NCBI RefSeq assembly: GCF_000150275.1
Contig: NW_002060987.1
Span: forward strand, 1 to 64,000
Direction of reading: 5' to 3'
Origin: Trichoplax adhaerens
Taxonomy: Eukaryota > Animalia > Placozoa
DNA: 64,000 nucleotides
Below, one piece after another: positions 1 through 52,964 of this stretch (its first letter is position 1; every line of letters starts with the position of its first letter). The notes beneath the pieces are model-generated. The model worked only from the letters and a program-made list of their open reading frames with translations. It ran no database searches and had not been told where the DNA came from. The translations under genes and the position numbers were made by a program.

Positions 1-341
1 CTAACCCTAACCCTAACCCTAACCCTAACCCTAACCCTAACCCTAACCCTAACCCTAACCCTAACCCTAACCCTAACCCTAACCCGAACCCTAACCCTAA
101 CCCTAACCCTAACCCTAACCCTAACCCTAACCCTAACCCTAACCCTAACCCTAACCCTAACCCTAACCCTAACCCTAACCCTAACCCTAACCCTAACCCT
201 AACCCTAACCCTAACCCTAACCCTAACCCTAACCCTAACCCTAACCCTAACCCTAACCCTAACCCTAACCCTAACCCTAACCCTAACCCTAACCCTAACC
301 CTAACCCTAACCCTAACCCTAACCCTAACCCTAACCTTAAC
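1..341 (-). repeat. Telomeric repeat (CCCTAA)n / (TTAGGG)n, chromosome end
   Basis: About 56 near-perfect CCCTAA units from base 1. One CCCGAA variant (G at 86) and a CCTTAA variant at the junction with unique sequence. Confidence 0.99.
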
Positions 342-4915: not shown

Positions 4916-5010
4916 CTACGCATAGGGTTGTTCCATAAACTCGTCAATTCTTTCAGCTTCACCAGCAATATACATTCTCAATTGATTATCCTCTATCGAA
5001 GGGTCTGAGA
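4916..5010 (-). pseudogene. Decayed relic of the KDM1A/LSD1 last exon (copy 1)
   Basis: Translates FSDPS...GEAERIDEFMEQPYA*, compared with KDM1A WFSDPF...[18 protein letters not shown] at 19761-20087. Confidence 0.7.
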
Positions 5011-5488
5011 AAATATTAGATAGATTCAAGTCTGTTTGGTCTCGGCATCTGCTTAAAATTATCTTATTTCTCCTTTTGCACTGTCTGCTTTTACATAGCA
5101 TGGTCAACAAAATTTCTTCATTTTTACGTACTATTGAATCAAATCTCAGAGAATCAACCTATTAGGTTATTGATCTTTATTTTGCTTTCATTTTTAAACC
5201 AATTCAAAAGAGATCTTTAAAACAGAGTGTAAACAATGACACAATCAAGTATTTGGCTTTAAGTTTTGTTTACTTAAGGCCAGAGAATATGCTCGAGTTT
5301 GATGGAAGCTTAAGTACTATAGTCGTTAAATTCTAAAAATTCGCATCTTAGTGGACCTAAAATGAAGGTACGATAGTACATGAAGGACCGTATTCATTCT
5401 AATAATTTCCTAATACAGTTCATAAAAATTATTTCGTGTTTATTAAGTGGAAGGATTGAATATTCTTTCAAATTTTATCTAAAGATAA

Positions 5489-7344
5489 CTAATTTTTGCA
5501 CAAACTTATTGTCTCGTCGAATTGCCCGAATAAAGAGCTTGATTGCAGATGTACTTGTTTTCTTTCTGCTATTATCTTCTCGAAATGGGCCATATCGTAT
5601 AAAGGAGGACTATTATCCTTTTTTTCTGAAATATGGTTTGCGGGGTCTACTAAAAAATAACAGAGTATCCTTCTCATTCCATCTGATTTTGCGGTGAATG
5701 GTAATACCTTATGTTGATATTTGTTAAAGAATACGATACATCTGCCTTTTTTAGCTTGTAACGATCCAATTGGCTTGATTGTCGATTCGCTATTATGTAC
5801 ATCATTTATCTCTGCAACCGGTTCATGGAAGTCTGATTGGTAAGACGCCAAAGTTGATTGGTCAATCCATTTCCTAAATGCCAATCTTGACGTATATATT
5901 CCTTGAATATTGGTATAACATACAGCACTGGCAACTATTTTTTCATTTGTTGTTCCTTCCACATGCCAACTTCCACCTGGGTATGATTCTCCCTTTTTTA
6001 ACCTTATTTCTGCGATTTTAACGATGACTTGAAGTTTTCTATTTCGGAGGCTTATTTTATTATGTTTAGAATCATCTTCATCAAATGAACGCTTTCTGGA
6101 TGATTGGTAATAACAATCATTTACGTTTAAAACATCTTCAAAAGCGGGCAGTACATCTTTTAATGAGGAAGTTATTGAATCGTAAATGGCCTTGTCTAAA
6201 TCTCTCGATAAATTTCCGATATTTCCTGAAATAGCTATGTTTCCCAAATCGTCTACAGTGATATCTACTGCTGGCCATTGATATTTAGACGAAATAGAAG
6301 CAGTTTGTAAGAAATACAAACTCGAGGGCATATTATTCCAGTCTTTACTCGGAGCAATTCCGTGGATAATAGGATCCAATGAAGGATGAACAATATCTAA
6401 AACCTTTCCGTCCGATCCCGGATGCCAAACTTCTTTAAACCGATCAGATAATAGATATTTGTCTACGGCTTCGTTAAAAGTTATATAGGATAAATCATCT
6501 TTCGTAACAATTCCTTCGGATTGAAGTAAAGTGTCGCCGCATACCTTTCTTTCCCTCGCAAACGTAACAAATCTGATATCGCCCGTCTGATTTCTGCCTC
6601 CTTGTATTTTTCTGCATTTTGTAACTCTTGCTTCCATTTTTCACAATATTTGAAGATTTTACTCTCCCAGTCAACCTTTGCCATACAAGCATCTTTGATA
6701 GCCACGACATTAGAATTATTACTAGGGATTCGCCAAGTATCTATAAATATCCGGATAAGGTATCTGGCTAATTCAGGATCTTCGTAGAAAGTCGGCTCCA
6801 TCATAGGATGATGTTGGTAATTTCCTTGCAATTGAAGAAGATAATGCACTACATCATAACATTGACCACGACAAGCCCAGCGGAAACCTTGATAGTTCCG
6901 GACAGAAACATCTACACCAATCGCTACCAGTTTTTCAAGTGAGCCAAGGCTTCCGTGGTGACATGCCCATCTCCATGCGTATTCATCTTTAACGCCAATA
7001 ATTTCTTCCCAATATTTTTTCGGAATATTTTCACTCATATCAAATCTAAAAGCTAACATGGTGAAATTGACCCTCGACGTCTTTTCCATGTAAGGCAGAA
7101 TACAACTTGACATAAAATCGAATAAAGGTTCTGCTTCGCTACTATATTCATCTTCACTCAATCTGAAAAAGTTAATCCACTCACCATCGTCATCTATATC
7201 TATATCAAATAATTTCGCTATTTCCTTTTTGCGTTCTTCTGAAGATTCATCGAAGAATTGTTCTATTTCTGTTATGGTTTCTTCTTCAATGCTATCGAAG
7301 TCTCCATATTTCATGTTTTCCATTAATTCTTTTACTTCTTCCAT
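5489..7344 (-). pseudogene. Ankyrin + DUF4246 gene copy 1, frameshifted
   Basis: ORFs 6481-7344 and 5489-6637 together match the intact 619-aa copy. A 1-bp deletion in a C-run (CCC at 6553-6555, CCCC in the other copies) breaks the frame and could be a sequencing error. The C-terminus is LCKN rather than LCEH. Confidence 0.8.
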
Positions 7345-9098
7345 TTTGTGTCAAATAATAGGCCAATCTATACTTACTGTCGCTTAAAAATCTCTGAGTA
7401 TATCACTAAAACTTCTAGCTATAACAATAAACTTTTCCTGCATAACCATGGAAATGCATTAGTCCAACTGACAAACAGGACCGCATGGCCTTCAGTTTTA
7501 GTTAGTAATCAAATAACAGTTATTTATAATCCATTAATAATTAATAATATGTAAAGTACTACATACTAATTCGGTGTGCTACCTCACTTACTTAGCACGC
7601 TATACAGTGCAGGCTCATAATTGTATTTATCAGCTCAACCTGTTGAGCATAATTAATATTGTAGTAACACTAGCTGAACACGCCCCATGCCATACGAATG
7701 AAAGTTCTGATATTATCAAGAAGTTAATGTTATGCAGATGCATAAGAAGTATCTTGAGTGGAATTGAAATCTAATTTCGATAATAACTTGTAGCATTTAA
7801 CTATGGCGTTACTTTCTTCAGCAATATAGTTATACAAATTAAGAAATATTAACGTAGAAAATAGCTGTTTGAGCACAGTGATGGATTCTATCACACCTTA
7901 ATTAATGACTACGAATTCAGCTATTAAGACCAGTACTCAGTTCTGCTTTAGGCAAATTTACTAATTCAAGACTTAGGGTTTTGCTAACTTCTGTAGTGCG
8001 GTATAGCAATGCCAAGTGATTGTAATATTAGCAATAAACAATTACTTCAAACTTATAGATTTTACTTAGATCAAAGACATTCATAGAGTTTTTACGAGTG
8101 AATAACGATCATACTGTATACAGAAACAAAATTACTTTTTTCAATCAGTGCCAAATGAGAATAGAATGCTTTTTATTTCAATCTAAAGCATCTTTAGGGT
8201 TTCCGTTTTCATATAATGTTGTATCATTCATACATGCAAATATATTTTGAATCAGCATCAAAAGTGTGCTTCAAAAATGTTATTTTCAGGAAGATCTGAG
8301 ATATTTCTAGATTTGAAATTGAAATCGCATTTCTGAATCGGCACCGAGTGAAGAATTGAAATAGGCAATATTCTATTCAAATCTATGCGTAGACCGGCCT
8401 ACTACTCTTCTACAGAGCTTTACTATTTATCTCGATAATACCTTCTAAATCCATTGCTAACACGAAATTCCATTGTCATAGTTTATAGCAACGGATGCAC
8501 TAGTAGGAAGTACGGTATTTCGCCATAAAATATTGATCCGAATAATAAATGGCTATATTACAAATTAAATTCAGTCTTTCGTATACTGTATTTTTTATCC
8601 AAGCTTATAGGATTTATGCTACATTGTAATAATTACGTATAATCAAACATTAAATTAAATCATACACGTGCAGTGCATGCATTGGTCCTCAATCAACCAT
8701 CGGCTTAGAATCGAAGTACTCAACTTGTTGTAAACATCAATAATTATTTAATAAATCATTAGTGGCCATTTTCTTATCAGAAATAGTTACTTTTTATAAA
8801 ATATGTAAGATTTCACTCCAAACATTTATAGTTATCAATTGAGTTTACAGACTGTAAAGAACAAGCATACGATATATTAGCACATAAATCAATGTAATAC
8901 TACTAATATCAACTAATGTAGCGACCAAATAGCCAACCACGAATTAGATGATAAAATTTCTCTTGAATCTTGGTGACAATTTAGCAGCTTAACTATTAAG
9001 AATTGTTACGCCAAACTTTTTCCATATCACTAAGAAAAATGGAAAGCTAAGAGACATACTGTGTTACAGTACATTAAGGTAACTGGAAAACTCTCATT

Positions 9099-11393: not shown

Positions 11394-12649
11394 CTAATGT
11401 TCGCATAAACTTATTGTCTCGTTGAATTGCCCGAATAAAGAGCTTGATTGNNNNNNNNNNNNNNNNNNNNNNNNNNNNNNNNNNNNNNNNNNNNNNNNNN
11501 TAATCTCTCGATAAATTTCCGATATTTCCTGAAATAGCTATGTTTCCCAAATCGTCTACAGTGATATCTACTGCTGGCCATTGATATTTAGACGAAATAG
11601 AAGCAGTTTGTAAGAAATACAAACTCGAGGGCATATTATTCCAGTCTTTACTCGGAGCATTTCCGTGGATAATTGGATCCAATGAAGGATGAACAATATC
11701 TAAAACCTTTCCGTCCGATCCCGGATGCCAAACTTCTTTAAACCGATCAGATAATAGATATTTGTCTACGGCTTCGTTAAAAGTTATATAGGATAAATCA
11801 TCTTTCGTAACAATTCCTTCGGATTGGAGTAAGGAGTCGCCGCATACCTTTCTTTCCCCTCGCAAACGTAACAAATCTGATATCGCCCGTCTGATTTCTG
11901 CCTCCTTGTATTTTTCTGCATTTTGTAACTCTTGCTTCCATTTTTCACAATATTTGAAGATCTTACTCTCCCAGTCAACCTTTGCCATACAAGCATCTTT
12001 GATAGCCACGACATTAGAATTATTACTAGGGATTCGCCAAGTATCTATAAATACCCGGATAAGGTATCTGGCTAATTCAGGATCTTCGTAGAAAGTCGGC
12101 TCCATCATAGGATGATGTTGGTAATTTCCTTGCAATTTAAGAAGATAATGCACTACATCATAACATTGACCACGACAAGCCCCGCGGAAACCTTGATAGT
12201 TCCGGACAGAAACATCTACACCAATCGCTACCAGTTTTTCAAGTGAGTTCAGGCTTCCGTGGTGACATGCCCATCTCCATGCGTATTCATCTTTAACGCC
12301 AATAATTTCTTTCCCAATATTTTTCCGGAATATTTTCACTCATATCAAATCTAAAAGCTAACATGGTGAAATTGACCCTCGACGTCTTTTCCATGTAAGG
12401 CAGAATACGACTTGACATAAAATCGAATAAAGGTTCTGCTTCGCTACTATATTCATCTTCACTGAATCTGAAAAAGTTAATCCACTCACCATCGTCATCT
12501 ATATCTATATCAAATAATTTCGCTATTTCCTTTTTGCGTTCTTCTGAAGATTCATCGAAGAATTGTTCTATTTCTGTTATGGTTTCTTCTTCAATGCTAT
12601 CGAAGTCTCCATATTTCATGTTTTCCATTAATTCTTTTACTTCTTCCAT
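11394..12649 (-). pseudogene. Ankyrin + DUF4246 gene copy 2, frameshifted and interrupted by an N gap
   Basis: An extra T at about 12311 splits ORFs 12293-12649 and 11380-12339. The gap at 11451-11500 stands in for roughly 650 bp of the oxygenase core. Ends ...SLCEH* with TAG at 11394-11396. Confidence 0.8.
11451..11500. other. Assembly gap (50 N)
   Basis: Run of N inside ANK-DUF4246 copy 2. Confidence 0.99.
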
Positions 12650-14734
12650 TTTGTGTCAAATAATAGGCCAATCTATACTTACTGTCGCTTAAAAATCTCT
12701 GAGTATATCACTAAAACTTCTAGCTATAACAATAAACTTTTCCTGCATAACCATGGAAATGCATTAGTCCAACTGACAAACAGGACCGCATGGCCTTCAG
12801 TTTTAGTTAGTAATCAAATAACAGTTATTTATAATCCATTAATAATTAATAATATGTAAAGTACTGCATACTAATTCGGTGTGATACCTCACTTACTTAG
12901 CACGCTATACAGTGCAGGCTCATAACTGTATTTATCAGCTCAACCTGTTGAGCATAATTAATAATGTAGTAACACTAGCTGAACACGCCCCATGCCATAC
13001 GAATGAAAGTTCTGATATTATCAAGAAGTTAATGTTATGCAGATGCATAAGAAGTATCTTGAGTGGAATTGAAATCTAATTTCAATAATAACTTGTAGCA
13101 TTTAACTATGGCGTTATTTTCTTCAGCAATATAGTTATACAAATTAAGAAATATTAACGTAAAAAATAGCTGTTTGAGCACAGTGAGGGATTCTATCACA
13201 CCTTAATTAATGACTACGAATTCAGCTATTAAGACCAGTACTCAGTTCTGCCTTAGGCAAATTTACTAATTCAAGACTTAGGGTTTTGCTAACTTCTGTA
13301 GTGCGGTATAGCAATGCCAAGTGATTGTAAAATTAGCAATAAACAATTACTTCAAACTTATAGTTTTTACTTAGATCAAAGACTTTCATAGAGTTTTTAC
13401 GAGTGAATAACGACCATACTGTATACAGAAACAAAATTACTTTTTTCAATCAGTGCCAAATGAGAATAGGATGCTTTTTATTTCAATCTAAAGCATCTTT
13501 AGGGTTTCCGTTTTCATATAATGTTGTATCATTCATACATGCAAATATATTTTGAACCAGCATCAAAAGTGTGCTTCAAAAATGTTATTTTCAGGAAGAT
13601 CTGAGATATTTCTAGATTTGAAATTGAAATCGCATTTCTGAATCGGCACCGAGTGAAGAATTGAAATAGGCAATATTCTATTCAAATCTATGCGTAGACC
13701 GGCCTACTACTCTTCTACAGAGCTTTACTATTTATCTCGATAATACCTTCTAAATCCATTGCTAACACGAAATTCCATTGTCATAGTTTATAGCAACGGA
13801 TACACTAGTAGGAAGTACGGTATTTCGCCATAAAATATTGATCCGAATAATAAATGGCTATATTACAAATTAAATTCAGTCTTTCGTATACTGTATTTTG
13901 TATCCAAGCTTATAGGATTTATGCTACATTGTAATAATTACGTATAATCAAACATTAAATTAAATCATGCACGTGCAGTGCATGCATTGGTCCTCAATCA
14001 ACCATCGGCTAAGAATCGAAGTACTCAACTTGTTGTAAACATCAATAATTATTTAATAAATCATTAGTGGCCATTTTCTTATCAGAAATAGTTACTTTTT
14101 ATAAAATATGTAAGATTTCACTCCAAATATTTATAGTTATCAATTGAGTTTACAGACTGTGAAGAACAAGCATACGATATATTAGCACATAAATCAATGT
14201 AATACTACTAATATCAACTAATGTAGCGACCAAATAGCCAACCACGAATTAGATAATAAAATTTCTCTTGAATCTTGGTGACAATTTAACAGCTTAACTA
14301 TTAAGAATTGTTACGCCAAACTTTTTCCACATCACTAAGAAAAATGGAAAGCTAAGAGCTATACTGTGTTACAGTACATTAAGGTAACTGGAAAACTCTT
14401 ATTACGTATATCACTAAATAGTACCATATGTACTGCTATAAAACTAATATTGCGTTAACATGCTTCACGGTATTACAGAACAGTACAGTAAATTATCGTA
14501 TAGCAACTAAGTACAATAACGACGCCTACATGAATGTCGTATTATTACATTAGTGCTGCATTAGGAACGACGATTTATCATTTGTCCAATATGTTTGTAT
14601 CATGATTGTACTGTAAGTAAAACAAGGATCGAGTAGAAAGAGCATCAAGTACTGTAGCCTCAATATTAGTTACCATTTGAGCCATTTATCTAGAATTCAT
14701 GCTAAAATTATTATAATTATCGTTACCCGAGTGA

Positions 14735-15230
14735 ATGAACATTACTTCTTGCTATGTAACAATCTACAACAGATACATCATCCTCTATATAGTATATTGC
14801 CGCCTTTCTGGGCATAGTACAGTTATCACTTGAACCATTTATCTAGAAATCATGGTAAAATTATTACAATTATCATTACCCGAGTTAGTGAACATTACTT
14901 CTTACTAAGTTATAATCTGCAATAGATACCGAACCTCTAACACCTATTTCTGGGTATAGGGTTGTCTTATAAACTGTGCTGCAATTCTTCCAGCTTTACT
15001 ATCAAGAAGATTTATCACTGATAACCCCCTTTCAGCATCGGTTCTAGGACAATTTTCTCCTGGGCAGCTGTTGAAGCAATAGGTGAAACAGGTGTTGCTA
15101 ATACGTCATAGTCAGCACCGAAAGTAAGAACTAAATACTGTACTATACCATGAGTAAGATCCTTCCGTCGAAGGTCATTGATCTGTTTGGTTGATTCATA
15201 CGATTTGTTCCCTGCATCGACCTAAAATTA
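14735..15230 (-). pseudogene. Decayed duplicate of the KDM1A/LSD1 last exon and proximal 3' UTR (copy 3, best preserved)
   Basis: GTTGAAGCAATAGGTGAAACAGGTGTTGCTAATACGTCATAGTCAGCACCG (15070-15120) aligns to GTTGAAGCATTAGGTGAAACAGGTGATGCCATTATGTCATAATCTGCACCG (19957-20007). GGGTATAGGGTTGTCTTATAAACTG...AATTCTTCCAGCTT aligns to 19781-19825. 14738-14817 aligns to the 3' UTR/stop region 19712-19788. Confidence 0.85.
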
Positions 15231-15651: not shown

Positions 15652-17511
15652 TTAATGTTCACACAGACTTATAGTCTCGTCATAGTTTGCCTGTAAAAGT
15701 ACCTTTTTTCTTTCTTCTATTATCTTCTCGAAATGGGCCATATCGTATAAAGGAGGACTATTATCCTTTTTTTCTGAAATATGGTTTGCGGGGTCTACTA
15801 AAAAATAACAGAGTATCCTTCTCATTCCATCTGATTTTGCGGTGAATGGTAATACCTTATGTTGATATTTGTTAAAGAATACGATACATCTGCCTTTTTT
15901 AGCTTGTAACGATCCAATTGGCTTGATTGTCGATTCGCTGTCATGTACATCATTTATCTCTGCAACTGGGTCATGGAAATTCTGTTGATAAGACGTCAAA
16001 TCTTCGAATTCGTCAATCCATTTCCTAAATGCCAATCTTGACGTATATATTCCTTGAATATCGGTATAACATACAGCACTGGCAACTATTTTTTCATTTG
16101 TTGTTCCTTCCACATGCCAACTTCCACCTGGGTATGATTCTCCCTTTTTTAACCTTATTTCTGCGATTTTAACGATGACTTGAAGTTTTCTATTTCGAAG
16201 GCTTATTTTATTATGTTTAGAATCATCTTCATCATATGAACGCTTTCTGGATGATTGGTAATAACAATCATTTGCGTTTAAAACATCTTCAAAAGCGGGC
16301 AGTACATCTTTTAATGAGGAAGTTATTGAATCGTAAATGGCCTTGTCTAAATCTCTCGATAAATTTCCGATGTTTCCTGAGATAGCTATGTTTCCCAAAT
16401 CGTCTACAGTGACATCTACTGCTGGCCATTGATATTTAGACGAAATAGAAGCAGTTTGTAAGAAATACAAACTCGAGGGCATATTATTCCAGTCTTTACT
16501 CGGAGCAATTCCGTGGATAATAGGATCCAATGAAGGATGAACAATATCTAAAACCTTTCCGTCCGATCCCGGATGCCAAACTTCTTTAAACCGATCAGAT
16601 AATAGATATTTGTCTACGGCTTCGTTAAAAGTTATATAGGATAAATCATCTTTCGTAACAATTCCTTCGGATTGGAGTAAGGAGTCGCCGCATACCTTTC
16701 TTTCCCCTCGCAAACGTAACAAATCTGATATCGCCCGTCTGATTTCTGCCTCCTTGTATTTTTCTGCATTTTGTAACTCTTGCTTCCATTTTTCACAATA
16801 TTTGAAGATTTTACTCTCCCAGTCAACCTTTGCCATACAAGCATCTTTGATAGCCACGACATTAGAATTATTACTAGGGATTCGCCAAGTATCTATAAAT
16901 ACCCGGATAAGGTATCTGGCTAATTCAGGATCTTCGTAGAAAGTCGGCTCCATCATAGGATGATGTTGGTAATTTCCTTGCAATTGAAGAAGATAATGCA
17001 CTACATCATAACATTGACCACGACAAGCCCAGCGGAAACCTTGATAGTTCCGGACAGAAACATCTACACCAATCGCTACCAGTTTTTCAAGTGAGTTCAG
17101 GCTTCCGTGGTGACATGCCCATCTCCATGCGTATTCATCTTTAACGCCAATAATTTCTTCCCAATATTTTTTCGGAATATTTTCACTCATATCAAATCTA
17201 AAAGCTAACATGGTGAAATTGACCCTCGACGTCTTTTCCATACGCGGTAGAATACGACTATTTATAAAATTGATTACAGATTCTATAGCCCTACTGTAAC
17301 TGGTACCGTTGTAGGTATCTGTGCACTCTTTGAAAAAGATGATCCACCCATCATCATCTTCAATATCTATATCAAATAAATCTGCTATTTCCTTTTTGCG
17401 TTCTTCTGAAGATTCATCGAAGAATTGTTCTACTCCCTTCAGGCTTTCTTCTTCAATGCTATCCAACTCTCCATATTTCATGTTTTCAATCAATTCTTTT
17501 ACTTGTTCCAT
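15652..17511 (-). CDS. Intronless 619-aa protein: acidic N-terminus, about 2 ankyrin repeats, DUF4246 (2OG-Fe(II) oxygenase-like) domain
   Basis: Ankyrin segment YAWRWACHHGSLNSLEKLVAIGVDVSVRNYQGFRWACRGQCYDVVHYLL. DUF4246 hallmarks WHPGSDGKVLDIVHPSL, SKYQWP, LQVIVKIA, YPGGSWHVEG, NEKIVASA, GRCIVF, QHKVLPF, RRILCYFLVDP and terminal LCEH. Confidence 0.9.
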   Translation of the reverse strand: MEQVKELIENMKYGELDSIEEESLKGVEQFFDESSEERKKEIADLFDIDIEDDDGWIIFFKECTDTYNGTSYSRAIESVINFINSRILPRMEKTSRVNFTMLAFRFDMSENIPKKYWEEIIGVKDEYAWRWACHHGSLNSLEKLVAIGVDVSVRNYQGFRWACRGQCYDVVHYLLQLQGNYQHHPMMEPTFYEDPELARYLIRVFIDTWRIPSNNSNVVAIKDACMAKVDWESKIFKYCEKWKQELQNAEKYKEAEIRRAISDLLRLRGERKVCGDSLLQSEGIVTKDDLSYITFNEAVDKYLLSDRFKEVWHPGSDGKVLDIVHPSLDPIIHGIAPSKDWNNMPSSLYFLQTASISSKYQWPAVDVTVDDLGNIAISGNIGNLSRDLDKAIYDSITSSLKDVLPAFEDVLNANDCYYQSSRKRSYDEDDSKHNKISLRNRKLQVIVKIAEIRLKKGESYPGGSWHVEGTTNEKIVASAVCYTDIQGIYTSRLAFRKWIDEFEDLTSYQQNFHDPVAEINDVHDSESTIKPIGSLQAKKGRCIVFFNKYQHKVLPFTAKSDGMRRILCYFLVDPANHISEKKDNSPPLYDMAHFEKIIEERKKVLLQANYDETISLCEH

Positions 17512-17669
17512 TTTGTATCCAGCAACAAAAACAATTTCAGTGAAGATGATAACCTAGATAGCGCTTAAAACTCTCTTAACTTGATGCAGTTTATAGGTGC
17601 AATTAGAAGCAAAGATGAAATTTATTTTGCTGCTTAAACCATTGAAATGAGTCAGTTTGCAACTAGCAG

Positions 17670-17788
17670 ATACTGTATACTGTACAGTACTGCATAGTAC
17701 AGTATAGAGTACAGTACTATACACGGTATACAGTACAGTATGTACTGTACTGGACTGGAGTGGATGGTACTGTATACTGTACTGTACA
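17670..17788. repeat. ACAGT/ACTGT pentamer-rich microsatellite upstream of the intact ANK-DUF4246 gene
   Basis: Dense TACTG/TACAG units 160-280 bp upstream of the ATG at 17511. Confidence 0.85.
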
Positions 17789-19760
17789 GCAACTAACGAA
17801 TAAAATAAATGATGCAGGCTGGATCATGCCAGCATCGTTATTTGGAGTTAATTACCCTAACTGCGTACGCAACCCTAACCCTAAAAAATCTCCCGCAAAA
17901 ATAGGCTGACAGATTCCGTAAATTCCAACGTTTTTAAGTCATCGTACAAAATACAGTACTGTACAGAGTCTTGTAGTAACAACTACAGTATTAGCTACTC
18001 AACTATCAAACTATCCAGAAAGTTTTGTTTGCTGAATGTTGAAAACTCTATTGTTATCTATTTCCATACGCTTATGACCAACTGTACATTCTGTACAGTA
18101 CAGTATAGTAGCTAGAGATAAGCATTTTTTTAGTAAAAGAGTAATACGCACCCGGTCTTCTACCATATACAGTACTGTACTGTGCTTTATTAGCTCTGAA
18201 TATACGCGTATATGAATTATAATTGAAATAAAAATAGGCTGCTTTACTCATAACATTATTATAAAATAGCTGTTTACTAGCAAATCTCATTTAATCGATT
18301 TCATAGGAAATTAAAGTGCTATATAAAGTTGGGATTATATTGTTGGCCTAATTCTGTGTTCTTAGAAATTGTACTTCGGCTGGATATATAATATAAGTTA
18401 TAATATAACACAGACCTCTGCTCTATCTACCGCACGGAAGTAAAGTGTAAATAACAGAAAATACTTACAGTATTATTTTCTGTGTTAGTAAGAGCCAATA
18501 TCATAAGATGAGAATAAGCAAGCTAGAATTGCTCTATTACGAAATTCATCGGGTAGTAATGTCTATAATAGACGAGATGATTTAAATGATCTTCGAACAC
18601 AATTATTTATTCGTCTACATTGGTAGCAAAGTCTTAATAATCTCTAATTAGAGATTAGCATCGGGAGGGTCAATTTGGTGTAATGTGTTTATGTACGTAC
18701 ACTTGTTCATTTTATCGCGCGTTAGCATAGAAAGTATTTCAGTACTTCAATATTCTTTCGGAAATAACTCGCGCGACACTGTCTAAAATCTATCGAATGT
18801 CACGTAGAATGTATAATAAGTATAATAAAAAAAATATTTCCTAAACGCTTAGAAATATGGACTTGCAATTTAAATGAGTCAGACCATCGATGAATAATCA
18901 AGATTCATAATTTCTTCAGAATATTAAATAATAAATTTATGCAGAAAATAATCATGTAAAATACTTTGGATACCGTTAATTAGAATGGATACCGAACGTT
19001 TTTACAACATTTAAAGCCACGTATAGTTATCTACTCCTATAATGTGACTACTGTACTTAATTCGTTAACTAAACTCCATTTAAAGTATACTCTGAGATAT
19101 TAGCTCATTAGATTGATTTCAAATATCGAAAATGTTTATTTTGATTGCGCAATTTCACACAGTGAACTTACTATGTGTAAATTAAGAAAATCGAAATCTT
19201 CCCAGTACTACTTTAACGAAATTGGAAACATAAATAAGCTACAAAATAGAACTGCCCATAGCTAGCCTTGTCGCAATACACATAGGAACGTGTATACAAG
19301 CATATGTGCTTGCTGAAAAAGGAAATCTGAAAACTTACTGTATCTACTCGTATATTAACAGGTCAGGATAAAGCATTGGGATTAGATTATTTTATATCAG
19401 ATCATATGTCGCCAAGGCTACCCTTTAAATATCGTGGGCATTTTAAAGCTTTATCGTTTGTTGAATATGTCCGATGGCAAACAACATTATTCGACAACGG
19501 AAATTATGAAGGAGCCTCGATGATATAGTTAATATATAAACCTTATCTAGAAGACAATATAATTAGTTATCACCGTACTTGTACAGAAATAACAGAATGG
19601 CTAGGTAAAATGTAATTTCTATACTTACAATGATATCTACATTGATCGGCATTTTCAAAGTCAAAAAAAATGTACATGAAATAGACCTTGAAGTATGAAC
19701 ATCCAATATGAATAACATTAATTTTAGATATCTAACAAGCTACAACAGGCATATCGTCCT

Positions 19761-22700
19761 TTATACATTGCTGTCTTCCGGGGCATAGGGTTGTCCAATA
19801 AACTGATCTGTAATTCTTCCAGCTTCTCTTAAACCACTCAAAATCGCCCCATGTACCGTGGCAGGATAATTTCTACAAGTATGTTCACCAGCAAAAAAGA
19901 CTCGTGGCTGATTAGGACCTTTTTCAACAGTACCTAAAGGCGTTCGGTTTGCAGTTGTTGAAGCATTAGGTGAAACAGGTGATGCCATTATGTCATAATC
20001 TGCACCGGAAGCGTGAACCCCGACATATGAATAAGATCCTTTCGAAAAAGGGTCACTAAACCATCGTGAAATACAGGTTTCCTTTGGCTAGAATTGTAAT
20101 TATAATCAAGCATTATAATTATCGCAAAACAAGTTGATGTCTAAAAGGATTTCTAATAGCAGAACCTTACCTGCGGTACATTATTAGCACCAAAGATACC
20201 TTTCAGGATTGCTACGGTTCGAGCGACAATAGTATCGTCGGAAATGTTTTCAATCGCTTCAGCAGCTTCGCCAGCGATTAGAGCGATTAAAACTGGACTT
20301 CGTTTCGTTGACCAAAATAAGAAAAGCTCACCTCTATCGCTCGTACAGGAATTTACATGGCCAAATAAATTGCTTTTCGAGTTCCAGAATATGCTTTCGA
20401 AACACAGTACAACCTTCGTTCATTTGAGGTGCAGATACAATTAGTGACGGGGAAAATCATGTTCAAATAATACTATAAATTACGGTTATTAAGATGGTAC
20501 CTTGTTAAGATTTCCGTACCCAAGCCTCTTAATGCCATTTGTCTTCCATTCAGGAAGAGGAGGATTAAATTGTATTAAAGAAGGATTATACTTATAGATT
20601 CCCAGTGGAACAGTCATCAGGACAGCATCGCCGCAAAATTTAGTTGTAGTATTGTCACTGCCGCCACTTTCATAGTTTGACTGCGTTATGATTTCTACTC
20701 CTGAAATATTCACATAATAATGTCGGCTTTATCACGGAAGAGAAGTTGATGGATAGAGATACAAAACAGTGCCATAGTACTATAACTAGAGACAATTCTC
20801 ATTTTAAGGCTAAAATACCGTACCTCTTTCATTGTAATTGATATTTCTTACGGTTGTATTTAGCTTTATATTTAATCCATCAGCAAGGGCTTCAGGAACA
20901 CATGAATAGCCATTTTTTACAATCAAGTGAGCACCAGAAAATTCGAAATCATCATCTTGATCCCAATATTTCAGAGATAGCCTTTTTAGTGGACATGCAT
21001 TCGCAAACTCCAAATTGGCAAAATGCCAATTTAGTATTTGGCAGTCTCTTGGAGATAGGTACACATCACTAGCAAATGTAAAGGATGGTATTACTTATAC
21101 TTATCCAAACATAAGAACACTAAAAGACATCAAAATTTTTTATTTTGAATGTAACATAAATCGCAATTAAATCGTACCTTGGTGGGTTTGATTCCAAAAG
21201 AGATAATTTCTGTTGAATTTCCTGTTGTTTACTAAGAAGTGAATCATGCTCCTGGAAAAACAGAGACCATATGAGGCATAAATGAGAAATACTATCCAAG
21301 TGAAAGTGTAGCAGAAGCGTTGCTACACTGCTACAATTTCCCAATAAGACATAATCGAAACAAACTATCTGATGGTCTTTTTACCTTAAATAAAGATACT
21401 AATTCTCTAGCTTTGCTTCTAGCTTGAAATTCATTGTCAATACTGCTGTAAAAAATACCAATTCCTCAGCACTGATATCAGTATTTCAAGACTAGATTCC
21501 TTACTACCATAGCATTTTGAGTTAGCTAGCGATACCTTACAACTCACCTTGGCTGTTTCTTGGCATCAACACCAACGTGTTCTCTATGTATTTGAACGAT
21601 ATCAGTCTGCACAGTAATCAACTAAATATCACAAATGTAAGTAGCATTCGTATCAAGAATAGTATTATTCCAAGAATGAATATTAAGAAGAATTTCAAAT
21701 ACCTGTCTCTTGACAGCTAGACATTGGTCCTGCAGCTCATTGATTCTTTTATAATGTTGAATCAAATCTTCTTTCACTTGTCGCTCTCGAAGTCTAAAAT
21801 CGTTATCGATTATAGCTACTTAGTCATCCAAAAAAGCACAAGTACATTACAAATAATGCTGGATTTGTATGAGAAAACTAAGTAATGATAGCGCTAGATT
21901 CACACAGTATCTACTACTAACAGCCTTACAAAATTCAGTAATCAGTTTAATTTCTGTTTTCTAAGAGTATAAATATTACGTATACACACGATATCTAACC
22001 TCTATAAACAACATCATTGATCAATTATATTATCACGCATACAAAACTTAATTTTGTAATAGGATAATCAATTAAAGCTAAATATGCGTGCAGTTGAAAG
22101 AATATTCATTCTATTACTGTATTGATCATATAAAATAGTCTCTCAACCTATGCTGTTCAATTCAATGATTGATCAATGCAGTCCAAATGCTCAAAGGCAA
22201 CTTACTTAATCATAAGTTCTAAAGCTTCTCCTAAAGAAATTGGTTTATCGTCTACGCTATTAAAATCTATTTGATGGGACATATACGAAGTTGCTTCTAG
22301 TAAGCGATTGAATTCAGTTTCCACCATGTTATCTTTATCTTTGGGCACCAGAGAAGAGTAGGACTAATCAAATAGTTTAATACTTTATAAGTGTTGCATT
22401 CAACTATGACTGAATGAAATTAACGATTATTACTTACCATTTTCCCACTAGTTTCATAAAGTGGACAATCCTGCTTGATTCTTGATAATTCCATAGATAT
22501 CTGCTTAGATAAAATATCTATCGGATTTCCGCCTAAATATATGAACATATGCTACATTTATCAATTCTGCCATCAAATATGACATGCTACTGTACAAGGA
22601 TGATGAAATGATGTATCAATTATTTATTAAAAACTCGAAGATACCTAAGCCTGTTATAACCATGGCTCCAAGATCAGCAACCCAGCTTCCTTTAGAAAAC

Positions 22701-24963
22701 GTATTAATCCTTCCACCGACTCTATTCTGTACAGAAAGGAAATAAAACCGGTTACCAATCTGATTAATAGCTATCTGCAAAGGAAAGGACTGTACGTACC
22801 CTCCCTTCAATTACTATGACATCGATGCCAAATGATTGTAGTTGTCGAGCTGCAATTAAACCTGATGCACCGGCTCCAACAATTAAAACGGTTGTTTTTG
22901 TAGCTGTAGAGTTAATATAAAGCAAGTAAGAAAATCATTTTAAGTGCTAGTACAGATGGTCTTTAATTATAATTAATAACCCTGGAAAATAGTAAACATA
23001 CATGTAGGTCTCTTAAGGAGTCTGTAAATACCAAAATTAATCAATCCATAACGCGTTAAATAGCCATGCAAACGCGTTATAAGGTGCCTATTATCTAGAA
23101 AATTTTCAGAAATTTTTGATTCATATTTGTAGGATTCTAAAATATCATTAATATGCTATTTTGATGTATAATACAATTATTTATCGATATTATACTTACT
23201 ATTATACGGTGCCTGAAATTGTGGAATGGCTGCTTCGATAGTAAGTTCTACCTTGGGATTATTAAGCCATAATTCCAACTAGAGATGATTTAATACATGA
23301 AATTTATCACATGATCATTTCTATCATCTAAGAGCATCTGACGATAACGAACAATTTATAAAATATTAACTTTAGTTAAGATTACCAAGCGATTCCGAAT
23401 GTATAAAAATGTAGACTTTAGTGAATTGTTTTGAGCGATATCAGGAAAACAATTCATCTCTTGAGGTGTAATTTGATCATGTGGCAAGCGACTTCGAAAG
23501 GCTGCTCCTTCCATTCCTAATCAATTACAAGTTATGAAGTATCAGCCATTAATGGTTCATAAAGACCATGGAATAATGATGATGCAATGTTACTTTCGTT
23601 AGTATTTGAAGTTTTTTACCTTCAGGAATTTCTCCATACTGATCGTCTTCATTAATGGAAGCATCAGAAAATTCTGGTGATAGTTCATCTTCAGTTAATT
23701 GAGCTAATTTCTCGTCCATTTCTCGATATTCAACCTACATTATGAAAGGAATTTACGGAATTATTAAAGGGGCATTTTCTATACCTGCAATGAAGCAGTT
23801 ATATAAAGTTTATAAGCCTTTGAGTAAAATCAATTCATACTGTATTATAACTTAAGCAAAATACTTTGTTGTTAGCAAAAAATAATTAATAACAGGAAAA
23901 GAGTAATATTTAGTCACGACAACGAGGGTACAGTAAATTGACCATAGTAATAATTTCATTAAAGGGAAACATGAATGATTAATCCACTTAATTAAGCGCT
24001 AATCGCGTAGTATTAGTTGCTAAGGTTATGGTTATACGTGTGGTATACTCGTATGTTGATGGGAAATGGCACTTGTAGATCAGCAGTTCCGTTCAATACA
24101 CTCGAGTACAAGAGGCAGGAATGCAAAGAGCGTTATCTCCCCCATAGATGAGTGTAATTGTACCGAATGTATTGGTAGATTGTTGACCACTTGGTAATAA
24201 ACAGTTAACGAAGGATTATAGCAGAATACTTCGGTGTTGACTGTTTATGACTCTAATTCGAATGGATTTGATGTGTCATTGTAGCCACGCATTCACTGTT
24301 CAATCGAATAGTTACAATGCTATGACTTTTTTTTGTATGCAACCTGAAGAAACAAACTGCATATTGCCGGCCCGCGTCAGATCAGATTTTAGAAACGTAT
24401 ATTACATACCATACTACAATCAGTGGCACCAACTGCCCTACATACATTTCAATGTTGCATTTATCAGTGATTGTGCCACTAGAAAGATCAGACATGGGGA
24501 TATTTTCTCTCGCCGCATTATTGCATTCAACATTATACGCAAAGTAAAGCACTTTCCATTTCTTGATAATAACCCTTATACCAATACTGTAACTATGGTA
24601 AGTCTGTCAGGTAGATTTAAACTGCCAGTTAGTTATCTTCGATTGAACAAGGAATAATAGTATTTTAGCTTGCTAACTACATTTCCTGTGGAGAATGTTG
24701 AACGTTATATTGATGCAATAGATCAAGTGCAATGTTAATGGTGAACAATGTACCGTTATTGGGAAAGTGGACATGTCTATTCTGGGACATCTATTAAGTG
24801 TTTTCAGTACTTTGTTTTTCGATAGTGACTGGTGTATTATGATGTATACCTTGGGTCGTTTTCGCTGGCTTTGACGGCGTGTTATTACATCTTCTTCGTC
24901 GCTGTTTCTCGCACCTGGAGAAAGCCACTTATTTTCTGGTACGCTTTGTTTGCTTCCGTTCAT
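19761..24963 (-). CDS. KDM1A: Lysine-specific histone demethylase 1 (LSD1), multi-exon
   Basis: Spliced translation gives RKRPK|[34 protein letters not shown]...[15 protein letters not shown] motif [31 protein letters not shown], tower helices, [21 protein letters not shown] (catalytic Lys) and [30 protein letters not shown] introns; first coding exon 24850-24963, last 19761-20087. Confidence 0.96.
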
Positions 24964-25585
24964 CTTCTCTCAGTCTACTCTAAATGATGACTATGATGAA
25001 CCCATTTGATAACGTTAACACTGATCCATGTTACAATCAATCTACTCCATTACAAGTTGACAACGTCCATGATTACATCTATACCTCACTACATTAACTA
25101 TCGGTATACTGACTGAATTTCAATTCAAAATAGTCAAATTCTCCATCTTCTGATCAGTTGACTACTAGAGGTACTAGAGCATTGATACGAGTAAAACTTG
25201 CATCCCGTACAATGATGATAATGGCAGAATCAATTACCAGTTTCAATGGTTATCCGATTTCTTTCCGCTACCAATGAAAGGATAGTAATATTCTTTCCGG
25301 TAATAGTCCAACAGTTTCTACTTGTTTCTATCAATCCTTCTTCAGTTCTAGGATAAATGAAGTGAGAAATATTCAATTGACTACCTAGACAAAGGGCAGC
25401 TTGAGTCGCAACTTCACCAACACTAACACTACCGTACGATGCACTGCGTATCATGTATCCTACACCAGCTGACTACAGTGACAGCACTAAGCCAGCGTCG
25501 AATCTATTTGAATCGAGTCGATTCAATTTTGCTTGTTTTGCTGATTGGATCAGAGTCCGACTAGCGTCACACCGTACTAAGGCTT

Positions 25586-52765: not shown

Positions 52766-52964
52766 GAATCAGAACTTTAGAATTTAGAACTTAGAATTTG
52801 GTACTGTAGCAAATCATCTTTGCACTGTAGACTGACCATGCCGAACGGTGAGGTGATTTGGATACGACAGATTAACTTGATTTCACTCGTACAGATCATA
52901 GCTTGAAAAATAGATTCCGTTTTCGGTAGAGCATACAATATTGTCAAGATTCTATATTTCAACG

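What the first reader, a model, noticed from the sequence alone, without database searches (positions are those of the whole stretch)
15652..17511. Intronless ankyrin + DUF4246 oxygenase gene amplified at an animal telomere: candidate horizontally acquired enzyme
Seen: a 619-aa single-exon gene in a window where all the conserved genes have introns, present in three tandem copies within 18 kb of the telomere. It retains an HxE...H triad (WHVEG...QHKV) and a downstream Arg (RRIL), the layout of a 2OG-Fe(II) dioxygenase. Known: DUF4246 is an uncharacterised family typical of fungi, actinobacteria and protists, not a standard animal gene. The YAxRWA..G..VV.YL style of ankyrin repeat resembles those abundant in giant-virus (Mimiviridae-like) proteins. 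Inference: a foreign, possibly viral or protist-derived, ANK-oxygenase fusion has been domesticated and expanded in the subtelomere. The ankyrins could target a protein substrate for hydroxylation or demethylation.
Basis: partly seen in the sequence, partly recalled or inferred. Interest (0 to 1): 0.82.

Follow-up and report, generated by a model that had tools for sequence, protein, structure and literature searches.

The report
Foreign ankyrin-oxygenase gene at placozoan telomere
A single-exon gene beside a Trichoplax chromosome end encodes a predicted iron/2-oxoglutarate oxygenase whose only relative with the same domain layout sits on a contig that looks like a giant virus, so it is a credible case of gene transfer into one of the simplest animals.

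Summary
Window 15652-17511 (-) is an intact 619-aa single ORF. It is the public Trichoplax adhaerens gene TRIADDRAFT_62423, already labelled "DUF4246 domain-containing". It lies 15 kb from a (CCCTAA)n chromosome end. Two more copies lie nearer the telomere, but both are broken.

- **Domains.** The C-terminal two thirds match Pfam DUF4246 (6e-54). They fold as a 2OG/Fe(II)-dioxygenase barrel (Z 12-15), and H466, E468, H551 and R564 are conserved. The "ankyrin" part is only two repeats, below Pfam cut-offs.
- **Not contamination.** A Trichoplax sp. H2 contig is collinear at 98.8% through intron-bearing KDM1A, the intact copy and part of copy 2.
- **Relatives.** Named relatives are fungi, oomycetes, an actinobacterium, giant viruses and one nematode record.
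- **Same fusion.** The only protein with the same ankyrin+DUF4246 layout (35% identity over 487 aa) lies on a gene-dense 41-kb, 56% GC contig carrying giant-virus families.
- **Telomere relic.** A relic sits 360 bp upstream of the gene, in H1 and H2.

Horizontal origin is likely. A giant-virus link is plausible, but the direction of transfer, expression and enzyme activity are not shown. The scan has not noted this gene on other DNA.

The parts
1..335 (.). Terminal telomere tract, (CCCTAA)n on the + strand: the chromosome end.
   Evidence: Read directly. 55 overlapping TTAGGGTTAGGG matches, against 0.18 expected by chance.
15652..17511 (-). Intact single-exon gene of 619 aa (= TRIADDRAFT_62423; ortholog TrispH2_009728): N-terminal helical region, two ankyrin-like repeats, then DUF4246.
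   Evidence: ORF. Pfam DUF4246 at 6e-54. 99% identical 619-aa H2 protein. Public names. GC 0.37 and GC3 0.32, like native ORFs in the window.
16957..17151 (-). Two ankyrin-like repeats, residues about 121-185 (DEYAWRWACHHGS...VDVSVRN / YQGFRWACRGQ...YLLQLQG).
   Evidence: Four Pfam ankyrin models hit here below their cut-offs. In a low-confidence model, Foldseek's top hits are nearly all DARPins or ankyrin proteins, over about 57 columns at rmsd 2-3 A and E about 1. This stretch is conserved with P0033 at BLASTP 2e-26.
16774..16836 (-). Retained canonical DUF4246 N-terminal motif, residues about 226-246 (K.DWESKI....KWKQEL against the family consensus KPxWxxK..D..I..KWKxE).
   Evidence: E245 falls in a column at least 90% conserved in the family alignment. 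The motif is visible in the alignments. The local Pfam copy gives no significant PF21666 hit.
15763..16707 (-). Catalytic domain, residues about 269-583: DUF4246 core, predicted double-stranded beta-helix 2OG/Fe(II)-dioxygenase fold.
   Evidence: AF2 pLDDT is about 90 over most of this range. VIA-align Z 12-15 with about 190 aligned residues to BelL, HrmJ, PHD2, P3H1 and Trichoplax PHD. Foldseek E about 1e-5.
16108..16116 (-). Codons for H466-V-E468, the proposed first two iron ligands (HxE).
   Evidence: H466 is invariant and E468 at least 90% conserved among 30 family members. Their role as ligands is inferred from the 2OG-oxygenase pattern.
15859..15861 (-). Codon for H551, the proposed distal iron ligand (QHKV).
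   Evidence: Invariant. It lies on the predicted strand at residues 549-553.
15820..15822 (-). Codon for R564, the proposed 2-oxoglutarate C5-carboxylate binder (RRIL).
   Evidence: At least 90% conserved. It lies on the predicted strand at residues 556-572, thirteen residues after H551. The role is inferred.
5437..7352 (-). Copy 1, full length but broken. A one-base length difference near 6.55 kb splits it into ORFs 6481-7344 and 5489-6637.
   Evidence: The central 1.1 kb is 98-100% identical to copy 3 while the ends are 86-91% identical. dS is 0.027 centrally against 0.17-0.30 at the flanks, which indicates gene conversion.
11502..12657 (-). Copy 2: only the 5' 1.17 kb of the gene, with a one-base length difference near 12.30 kb. 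It is annotated publicly as TRIADDRAFT_62422, 'Ankyrin repeat protein'.
17855..17884 (-). Interstitial telomere relic: TTAGGGTTAGGG, then 12 other bases, then TTAGGG. It has the same orientation as the terminal tract and lies about 360 bp upstream of the intact gene's ATG.
   Evidence: It is the only non-terminal TTAGGGTTAGGG match in 64 kb (0.18 expected for the whole window). It holds three of the seven CCCTAA hexamers found outside the terminal tract, and it is conserved in H2 at L006 9652-9663 (sequence read).
19770..24966 (-). Neighbouring spliced gene KDM1A/LSD1 (SWIRM + amine oxidase). Coordinates are projected from the H2 gene model.
   Evidence: The H2 model is 761 aa over 5.2 kb. The H2 contig is collinear with window 27543-11675 at 98.8% identity.

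Best explanation
This is a chromosomal Trichoplax gene of foreign origin.

What it encodes. A short N-terminal module holds two ankyrin-like repeats. It is fused in front of a complete DUF4246 unit: the family's N-terminal KWKxE motif followed by a double-stranded beta-helix catalytic domain.

Likely mechanism (inferred). The catalytic domain most likely works as an Fe(II)/2-oxoglutarate-dependent oxygenase. Iron would be held by H466, E468 and H551, and the 2-oxoglutarate C5 carboxylate by R564. The ankyrin-like module would act as a docking surface that brings a protein partner or substrate to the active site, or that localises the enzyme. The substrate is unknown.

Likely history (inferred). 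The composite gene shares a recent ancestor with a gene carried by a giant-virus-like element. It most likely entered the placozoan lineage from such a virus or from that virus's host. It appears to have been joined onto a former chromosome end just beyond KDM1A. It was then duplicated in tandem towards the new telomere and partly homogenised by gene conversion. Only the innermost copy is still intact.

Shown here: the gene structure, its chromosomal context, family membership, the predicted fold, the conserved residues and the shared architecture. Inferred: catalysis, the role of the ankyrin module, the direction of transfer and capture at a telomere.
For: Integrity and context.
- Intact 619-aa ORF.
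- The H2 contig is collinear at 98.8% through KDM1A, the intact copy and into copy 2.
- Native-like composition: GC3 0.32 against 0.28-0.30 for neighbouring ORFs.
- dN/dS against the H2 ortholog is 0.21 (7 synonymous, 6 non-synonymous differences).

Enzyme.
- Pfam DUF4246 at 6e-54.
- Conserved H466, E468, H551 and R564.
- The AF2 catalytic domain has pLDDT about 90.
- 2OG/Fe(II) dioxygenases fill the fold-search list, at Z 12-15 with about 190 residues aligned.
- An oomycete family member gives a sub-threshold 2OG-FeII_Oxy_5 hit across the distal-His region.

Foreign origin.
- No introns, next to a spliced neighbour.
- These are the only DUF4246 copies in the genome.
- Of 1969 relatives in 1.84 billion proteins, those that could be named are oomycetes, chytrids and other fungi, Nocardia, Yasminevirus, and one nematode record.
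- Four giant-virus MAG contigs, and a fifth IMG/VR viral contig, also carry DUF4246.

Viral link.
- The best non-placozoan hit, P0033/P0177 (E 2.5e-72), aligns from the ankyrin-like repeats through the catalytic domain: 35% identity over 487 aa.
- The N-terminal module alone aligns at 2e-26.
- On catalytic-domain columns alone the two sequences pair with UFBoot 94 / SH-aLRT 98.
- The contig carrying P0033 is 41 kb and 56% GC. It has about 45 intron-free genes on both strands, most without known relatives. Two genes are VP39-like cap methyltransferases; the one searched has Medusavirus among its named relatives. It also has DUF5766 (three copies), DUF5754, a polynucleotide kinase-phosphatase, and MYND and C2H2 fingers.
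- DUF5754 is annotated in the giant virus CpV-BQ1 (PMC12085832). The Atlas cluster carrying DUF5766 is 85% viral, mostly Nucleocytoviricota.

Telomere capture.
- The only interstitial TTAGGG repeat in the window sits at the inner edge of the gene block, oriented like the true telomere, and is conserved in H2.
Against: - Only one sequence cluster (P0033/P0177) with the same architecture is known. Trichoplax is therefore not nested inside a viral clade, and the direction of transfer is undetermined.
- Trichoplax and P0033 are both long branches.
- The deeper position of the pair is unresolved. An AU test does not reject Trichoplax plus the nematode sequence (p 0.26).
- The virus-like contig has no capsid or other hallmark gene in its 41 kb. 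The relatives of its cap methyltransferase also include protists such as Thecamonas. It could therefore be a compact eukaryote or an endogenous element.
- No NCLDV capsid family and no relative of the contig's other genes were found in the Trichoplax genome or window.
- Scans of IMG/VR and JGI metagenomes for the fused architecture found nothing.
- Only about 50 of the relatives could be given organism names, so absence from other animals and from choanoflagellates is not proven.
- Interstitial telomere repeats are common at the borders of subtelomeric duplications in general.
- Expression and activity are untested. No DUF4246 protein has a solved structure, and no paper in the library mentions the family.
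Confidence: 0.6

Rival explanations
1. Host-to-virus capture, or a shared third donor. The ankyrin+DUF4246 fusion arose in a cellular eukaryote: a placozoan relative, or an unsampled protist or fungus. It was then taken up independently by the giant-virus-like element and, if the source was not a placozoan, by placozoans. The virus would be a recipient, not the donor.
For: With only two lineages in the clade, the tree carries no information on direction. Giant viruses are known, from general knowledge, to take up host genes. The pair sits loosely near chytrid, yeast and metagenomic sequences, not with the Yasminevirus or GVMAG DUF4246 group. No other gene of the virus-like contig is found in the window, and its cap methyltransferase has no match in the genome.
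Against: No cellular organism with the fused architecture turned up in 1.84 billion proteins or in JGI metagenomes. The Trichoplax gene has no introns and sits distal to a telomere relic. This argues that it arrived there and did not originate there.
Confidence: 0.22
2. Vertical inheritance. DUF4246 was present in the opisthokont ancestor, which would explain why it is common in fungi including chytrids. On this view it survives among animals only in placozoans, after loss elsewhere. The ankyrin-like module would be a lineage-specific addition, and the virus copied the gene from a placozoan-like host.
For: The family is widespread in fungi, the sister kingdom. The pair branches near chytrid and yeast sequences, with weak support. 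Composition is fully native. Monophyly with a nematode record is not rejected.
Against: This needs many independent losses across animals and their unicellular relatives. No holozoan other than placozoans and one nematode record appears among the named hits. The gene is a single exon in an intron-rich genome. It lies in the outermost 18 kb of a chromosome, beyond a telomere relic. The genome holds no other copy.
Confidence: 0.12
3. A decaying, non-functional subtelomeric relic. The intact copy merely has not yet picked up a disabling mutation and does nothing for the animal.
For: Two of the three copies are already broken. The signal of purifying selection rests on only 13 differences. Expression was not tested, and no paper mentions the locus tags.
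Against: All catalytic and family-invariant residues are intact. The 619-aa frame is kept in both H1 and H2. dN/dS is below 1 in every comparison, including between paralogs (0.30-0.56).
Confidence: 0.05
4. Contamination or misassembly. The block belongs to a microbe or virus in the culture and was wrongly joined to the KDM1A scaffold.
For: Nothing beyond the foreign look of the protein.
Against: An independent assembly of a different isolate (Trichoplax sp. H2, NOWV01000215.1) has the same junctions at 98.8% identity over 15.9 kb, including the relic and KDM1A. The block ends in an animal-type telomere. Its composition is that of the host.
Confidence: 0.01

Closest known systems
Canonical DUF4246 proteins (Pfam PF14033, with PF21666 DUF4246_N) of fungi and oomycetes, for example Aphanomyces euteiches and Spizellomyces punctatus SPPG_01399
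   Same: Same catalytic domain, same invariant residues (WHPGS, VHPS, GGSWHVEG, QH.V, R) and the same N-terminal KWKxE motif. Identity is 28-36%.
   Different: They have no ankyrin-like module. The Trichoplax protein carries about 215 extra N-terminal residues and does not reach significance on PF21666. No family member has a known function.
P0033/P0177, a 717-aa protein on Logan contig SRR20820732_18236 (also present in SRR20820733 and SRR20820735)
   Same: It is the only protein found with the same composite layout. The two ankyrin-like repeats share near-identical signature strings (DEYAWRWAC, VDVS.R.YQGFRWACR), followed by the KW..EL motif and DUF4246. Identity is 35% over 487 aa.
   Different: GC-rich (GC3 0.58 against 0.32). 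It has a longer N-terminus, a 12-residue insert in repeat 2 and a longer C-terminal tail. It lies among virus-like genes, not animal genes.
DUF4246 proteins of giant viruses (Yasminevirus sp. GU-2018 VBB17719.1; four GVMAG contigs in IMG/VR)
   Same: They show that DUF4246 is part of the giant-virus gene pool.
   Different: They have the canonical N-terminus with no ankyrin module. They form separate groups from the Trichoplax/P0033 pair in the trees.
2OG/Fe(II) dioxygenases with solved structures: BelL, HrmJ, PHD2/EGLN1, Trichoplax PHD, P3H1, IDO
   Same: Same double-stranded beta-helix core, at Z 12-15 with 180-200 aligned residues. The H-x-acid...H...R order on the expected strands also matches.
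   Different: Only 8-12% identity, and no sequence-level match to any PDB chain. The acid is Glu, where PHD2 has Asp (the D315E entry). The domain is larger, with a long helical insert. Activity is untested.
Foreign genes piled up at bdelloid rotifer telomeres (Gladyshev, Meselson and Arkhipova 2008; recalled from memory, not checked here)
   Same: An intron-free gene of non-animal type sits in the outermost part of an animal chromosome, with a telomere-repeat relic at its inner border.
   Different: A single gene family in a placozoan, not massive uptake. The nearest relative is virus-like, not bacterial or fungal.

Membership tests
Pfam DUF4246 (PF14033) | Match to the family HMM above the gathering score | tested here: met
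   184.2 bits against a cut-off of 26.7, E 6e-54, in two stretches covering profile positions 47-185 and 228-385 of 401.
Pfam DUF4246 (PF14033) | Family-invariant residues present | tested here: met
   H313, V324, H325, P326, W362, K448, L454, G463, W465, H466, G469, E473, I475 and F495 are invariant across 30 members including this one.
Pfam DUF4246_N (PF21666) | Match to the N-terminal domain HMM | tested here: not met
   No hit at E up to 1. Only the last motif (KWKQEL, E245) is recognisable in alignment.
2OG/Fe(II)-dependent dioxygenase superfamily | Double-stranded beta-helix fold | tested here: met
   The AF2 model has pLDDT about 90 in the core. The best structural matches are 2OG oxygenases, at Z 12-15 and Foldseek probability 1.00. 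This rests on a prediction, not a solved structure.
2OG/Fe(II)-dependent dioxygenase superfamily | H-x-D/E ... H iron triad plus a basic residue for 2OG | tested here: met
   H466-x-E468, H551 and R564 are conserved in the family and lie on or next to the expected strands. Their spatial convergence in the model could not be measured because no coordinates were available.
2OG/Fe(II)-dependent dioxygenase superfamily | Fe(II)- and 2OG-dependent turnover | not testable with these tools
   Needs a recombinant protein assay.
Ankyrin repeat (Pfam clan Ank) | Match to an ankyrin HMM above the gathering score | tested here: not met
   Ank_3 19.7 bits against 22.3, Ank_2 18.8 against 27.3, Ank 17.6 against 21.1, Ank_4 14.2 against 22.7, all at residues 131-202. 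The virus-like homolog scores weaker still.
Ankyrin repeat (Pfam clan Ank) | Stacked helix-turn-helix repeats of about 33 residues | tested here: inconclusive
   The model of residues 101-285 has mean pLDDT 66, with helix pairs at 25-34/38-46 and 51-64/68-77. Foldseek's top hits are almost all DARPins or ankyrin proteins, but at E about 1 over about 57 columns. Two repeats are likely. A larger ankyrin domain is not present.
Horizontally acquired gene in an animal genome | Physically integrated in host DNA (not contamination) | tested here: met
   Same junctions in H1 and H2, spliced KDM1A on the same contig, and a host telomere at the end.
Horizontally acquired gene in an animal genome | Absent from related animals and their unicellular relatives | tested here: inconclusive
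   Among the hits that could be named, none is a holozoan except placozoans and one Acrobeloides nanus record. Other placozoan genera could not be checked.
Horizontally acquired gene in an animal genome | Nested within a donor clade in a supported tree | tested here: not met
   It pairs with one virus-like sequence (94/98), but the pair's position is unresolved. The AU test does not reject an alternative grouping.
Giant virus (Nucleocytoviricota) origin of contig SRR20820732_18236 | Hallmark genes (major capsid protein, packaging ATPase, PolB, and so on) | tested here: not met
   None appear among the roughly 45 genes of the 41 kb. The assignment rests on gene density, many genes without relatives, paralog families, VP39-like methyltransferases, and DUF5766, DUF5754 and DUF5763.

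The most novel reading that the evidence does not exclude
A giant virus, or an element derived from one, delivered a ready-made ankyrin + 2OG-oxygenase gene to the placozoan germ line. The DNA was joined to an uncapped chromosome end beside KDM1A and sealed with a new telomere, and the animal has kept one working copy. This would be the first genomic trace of giant-virus contact with Placozoa. It would also be a second animal group, after bdelloid rotifers, in which telomeres serve as entry points for foreign genes. Finally, it would offer a tractable protein for giving the large, uncharacterised DUF4246 family its first function.
Probability: 0.4. Interest if true: 0.75.

Novelty: new variant of a known kind. 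Interest (0 to 1): 0.6.

Why it matters
Placozoans are among the simplest animals, and few well-supported cases of gene acquisition are known for them. Here the gene's chromosomal anchoring is secure. Its family is otherwise fungal, oomycete, bacterial or viral, and its one architectural twin sits on a giant-virus-like contig. If the viral link holds, it points to an unknown virus-host relationship near the base of the animal tree, and to telomere capture as a route for foreign DNA. DUF4246 has about two thousand detectable members and no known activity. A compact animal copy with a built-in protein-binding module is a reasonable starting point for finding its substrate.

Tried and rejected
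Rejected:
- **Contamination or misassembly.** The H2 contig has the same junctions.
- **A large endogenous giant-virus insertion.** tblastn of all 116 ORFs from 38 kb of the 41-kb virus-like contig against the window matched only the gene copies. The NCLDV capsid family and the contig's cap methyltransferase found nothing in the genome. The subtelomeric block holds no other ORF above 105 aa.

Led nowhere:
- Scans for more members of the fused architecture in IMG/VR and JGI metagenomes, using patterns from the ankyrin module, found none.
- A word search with the N-terminal 285 aa alone found only Trichoplax paralogs.
- A profile search against PDB sequences gave only chance-level hits.
- Paper searches for DUF4246, the locus tags and the SRA run returned nothing. 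The metazoan HGT compendium had no supplements held as text.
- 'Giant-virus flavour' of the repeats: the Atlas neighbours are viral ankyrin clusters, but at 0.88-0.89, below the level at which such hits are more than leads. A motif scan of the five viral DUF4246 loci found no similar repeat.
- Donor lineage from the tree: unresolved with FastTree on 180 rows, the quick tree on 48 rows and the careful tree on 28 rows. The careful 48-row run did not finish.
- The AU test of Trichoplax + Acrobeloides did not reject the grouping.

Handling notes. Overlapping pieces of one public 41-kb contig were laid back together in a script, only to list ORFs.
Full report
**What is there.** The window starts with 335 bases of (CCCTAA)n, a chromosome end. 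On the minus strand, 15652-17511 is an uninterrupted ORF of 619 aa. The assembly has 105.6 Mb in 1414 contigs. The best protein hit is TrispH2_009728 of Trichoplax sp. H2, at 99% identity. The same 90% cluster holds TRIADDRAFT_62423 of Trichoplax adhaerens (XP_002118391, UniProt B3SDR3), labelled 'DUF4246 domain-containing protein'. The gene is therefore already in public databases, with an automatic label. I found no paper that mentions the family or the locus tags.

**The three copies.** Repeat finding, BLAST and alignment show three copies in the same orientation.
- Copy 3, the finding itself, is intact.
- Copy 1 (about 5437-7352) is full length, but a one-base length difference near 6.55 kb splits it into two ORFs. 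It also has in-frame 15-nt and 3-nt gaps.
- Copy 2 (11502-12657) keeps only the first 1.17 kb and has a one-base length difference near 12.30 kb.

Identity between copies is uneven. It is 98-100% over the central 1.1 kb and 86-91% at both ends. Synonymous divergence is 0.027 centrally against 0.17-0.30 at the flanks. This is the pattern expected from gene conversion between tandem paralogs. The flanking spacers also repeat: 7353-9098 matches 12658-14403 at 98.5%, and 9149-11450 matches 3437-5545 at 91-94%. Short, diverged pieces resembling the 3' end of KDM1A lie at 14732-15124 and 4920-4960. This partly bears out another first-stage note on this window. No other DUF4246 match exists in the genome. 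A 200-bp fragment of the gene's 5' end lies on small contig C1293.

**Not an artefact.** The H2 contig NOWV01000215.1 aligns with window 27543-11675 as one 15.9-kb block at 98.8% identity. It runs through a spliced KDM1A/LSD1 gene (SWIRM + amine oxidase, 761 aa over 5.2 kb), the intact copy and into copy 2, where the H2 contig stops. Base composition matches native coding sequence in the window: GC 0.37 and GC3 0.32, against 0.37-0.38 and 0.28-0.30. The H1 and H2 orthologs differ at 7 synonymous and 6 non-synonymous sites, giving dN/dS 0.21. This fits purifying selection, but the counts are very small.

**The protein.** Pfam gives DUF4246 at 6e-54. An alignment with 29 relatives shows invariant H466 and H551, and at least 90% conserved E468 and R564. 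An AlphaFold model built on that alignment is confident over residues about 220-620 and poor before that. Foldseek and VIA-align both return only 2OG/Fe(II) dioxygenases for residues 269-583: BelL, HrmJ, PHD2, the Trichoplax PHD, P3H1 and IDO. Z is 12-15, with about 190 residues aligned, which covers most of each target. An oomycete member also gives a sub-threshold 2OG-FeII_Oxy_5 hit over the distal-His region. No PDB chain matches at sequence level, so the family has no solved structure. I read the domain as an Fe(II)/2OG oxygenase. The fold and residues are shown. Catalysis is inferred.

**The N-terminus.** All ankyrin HMM hits are below Pfam's cut-offs and confined to residues 131-202. A separate model of residues 101-285 reached only pLDDT 66. 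Its Foldseek hits are almost all DARPins and ankyrin proteins, but over about 57 columns at E near 1. Two ankyrin-like repeats (about 121-185) is a fair description. 'Ankyrin domain' is too much. After the repeats, residues 226-246 (K.DWESKI....KWKQEL) align with the family's usual N-terminal motif. The repeats were therefore added in front of a whole DUF4246 unit and did not replace its N-terminus.

**Relatives.** An exhaustive phmmer search of 1.84 billion representatives gave 1969 hits at E of 1e-3 or better. Those I could name are:
- oomycetes (Aphanomyces, Pythium, Phytophthora);
- chytrids (Spizellomyces, Gaertneriomyces, Rhizophlyctis, Entophlyctis, Polyrhizophydium) and other fungi;
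- Nocardia;
- Yasminevirus;
- one Acrobeloides nanus (nematode) UniRef record.

IMG/VR holds five viral contigs with DUF4246. Four are giant-virus MAGs, and all have the canonical N-terminus.

The best hit outside placozoans is different in kind. P0033/P0177 (717 aa, E 2.5e-72) aligns from the first ankyrin-like repeat to the end of the catalytic domain, at 35% identity over 487 aa. It shares strings such as DEYAWRWAC and YQGFRWACR. The N-terminal module alone scores 2e-26. On catalytic-domain columns only, the two sequences pair with SH-like support 99 (180 rows), SH-aLRT 94 (48 rows) and UFBoot 94 / SH-aLRT 98 (28 rows, site-heterogeneous model). Both are long branches, so the shared extra module is the stronger argument for kinship.

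**The contig that carries P0033.** It is a 41-kb Logan contig, seen in three runs of one series (SRR20820732, SRR20820733 and SRR20820735), at 56% GC. It holds about 45 intron-free genes on both strands with roughly 100-bp spacers, and most have no known family. The recognisable ones are:
- two VP39-like cap methyltransferases; the one searched has named relatives that include Medusavirus as well as Thecamonas and other protists;
- three DUF5766 genes, one DUF5754 gene and a weak DUF5763 hit;
- a polynucleotide kinase-phosphatase;
- a phosphatase-DUF4326-fucosidase fusion;
- a GH64-like protein, and MYND and C2H2 fingers;
- three 'Gad2' paralogs.

DUF5754 is annotated in the giant virus CpV-BQ1 (PMC12085832). 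The Atlas cluster carrying DUF5766 is 85% viral, mostly Nucleocytoviricota. No capsid or other hallmark gene lies in these 41 kb. I put about 80% on a giant virus or an element derived from one. The alternative is a compact cellular genome.

**How it got there.** The only TTAGGGTTAGGG outside the terminal tract is at 17873-17884, with a third unit at 17855-17860. It is on the same strand as the true telomere. It lies 360 bp upstream of the intact gene's start codon, between the gene block and KDM1A. It is conserved in H2. The simplest reading is that the chromosome once ended about 1.9 kb beyond KDM1A, and that everything now distal to that point was added later. Such relics also mark ordinary subtelomeric rearrangements, so this is supporting evidence, not proof. 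No other gene of the virus-like contig is in the window, and neither the NCLDV capsid family nor the contig's cap methyltransferase was found in the genome. At most a single gene was kept.

**What remains open.**
- Direction of transfer cannot be read from a two-member clade.
- The pair's deeper position is unresolved. An AU test does not reject joining Trichoplax to the nematode record (p 0.26).
Absence elsewhere in animals is likely but not proven.
- Scans for further fused members found none.
- Expression, metal binding and substrate are untested.
- The claim that the repeat style is typical of giant viruses rests on a language-model lead below its own reliability level, and on the single homolog.

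**Verdict.** Horizontal origin is well supported, at about 0.8. A shared origin with a giant-virus gene is supported by one strong piece of evidence, and virus-to-animal direction is the most economical reading. I give the whole chain about 0.6. The protein is a new architectural variant of a known but uncharacterised family, and the setting resembles known telomeric uptake of foreign genes. Interest is moderate to high: it rests on a single gene, a single viral relative and no functional data. The broken copies were only compared and described.

Noticed in passing
window 17855-17884 (-); L006 9652-9663: Interstitial telomere relic: TTAGGGTTAGGG, 12 other bases, then TTAGGG. It lies between KDM1A and the intact gene, in the same orientation as the terminal tract, and is conserved in Trichoplax sp. 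H2. It may mark a former chromosome end.
   Followed up: partly
window 14732-15124 and 4920-4960, against 19709-20011: Short pieces at 74-87% identity to the 3' end region of KDM1A lie distal to gene copies 3 and 1. This suggests the tandem unit once included the end of KDM1A.
   Followed up: partly
G000:C1293:4213-4412 (L021): A 200-bp fragment covering the gene's start and 58 bp upstream, at 85.6% identity, lies on a 13.7-kb contig with no telomere repeat in its first 10 kb. H2 also has a partial 213-aa model (TrispH2_012165) on a 6.3-kb contig.
   Followed up: partly
window 35869-39417 (-) and 41979-44921 (-): Two very long uninterrupted ORFs (1182 and 980 aa). The first has GH31 and trefoil domains and the second a trefoil domain only. 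Long intron-free coding stretches are therefore not unique to the DUF4246 gene in this window.
   Followed up: no
window 52941-54965 (+), 60028-61353 (+), 61529-62320 (+): ORFs of 674, 441 and 263 aa with no Pfam match at E up to 0.001. Their nature is unknown.
   Followed up: no
window 17620-17790 (-): A stretch of GTACAGTA/CTGTAC-type short repeats lies between the telomere relic and the gene's start.
   Followed up: no
L007/L015/L022 (Logan contig SRR20820732_18236, 41,041 bp): A giant-virus-like contig with paralog families: three Gad2, two VP39-like cap methyltransferases and three DUF5766 genes. It also has an unusual fusion of dual-specificity phosphatase, DUF4326 and alpha-L-fucosidase (707 aa).
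   Followed up: partly
P0039 (UniRef A0A914DG99, Acrobeloides nanus): A canonical 542-aa DUF4246 protein is recorded for a nematode. It groups with unnamed metagenomic sequences (P0036 and P0070, or P0038). It could be contamination or a separate transfer.
   Followed up: partly
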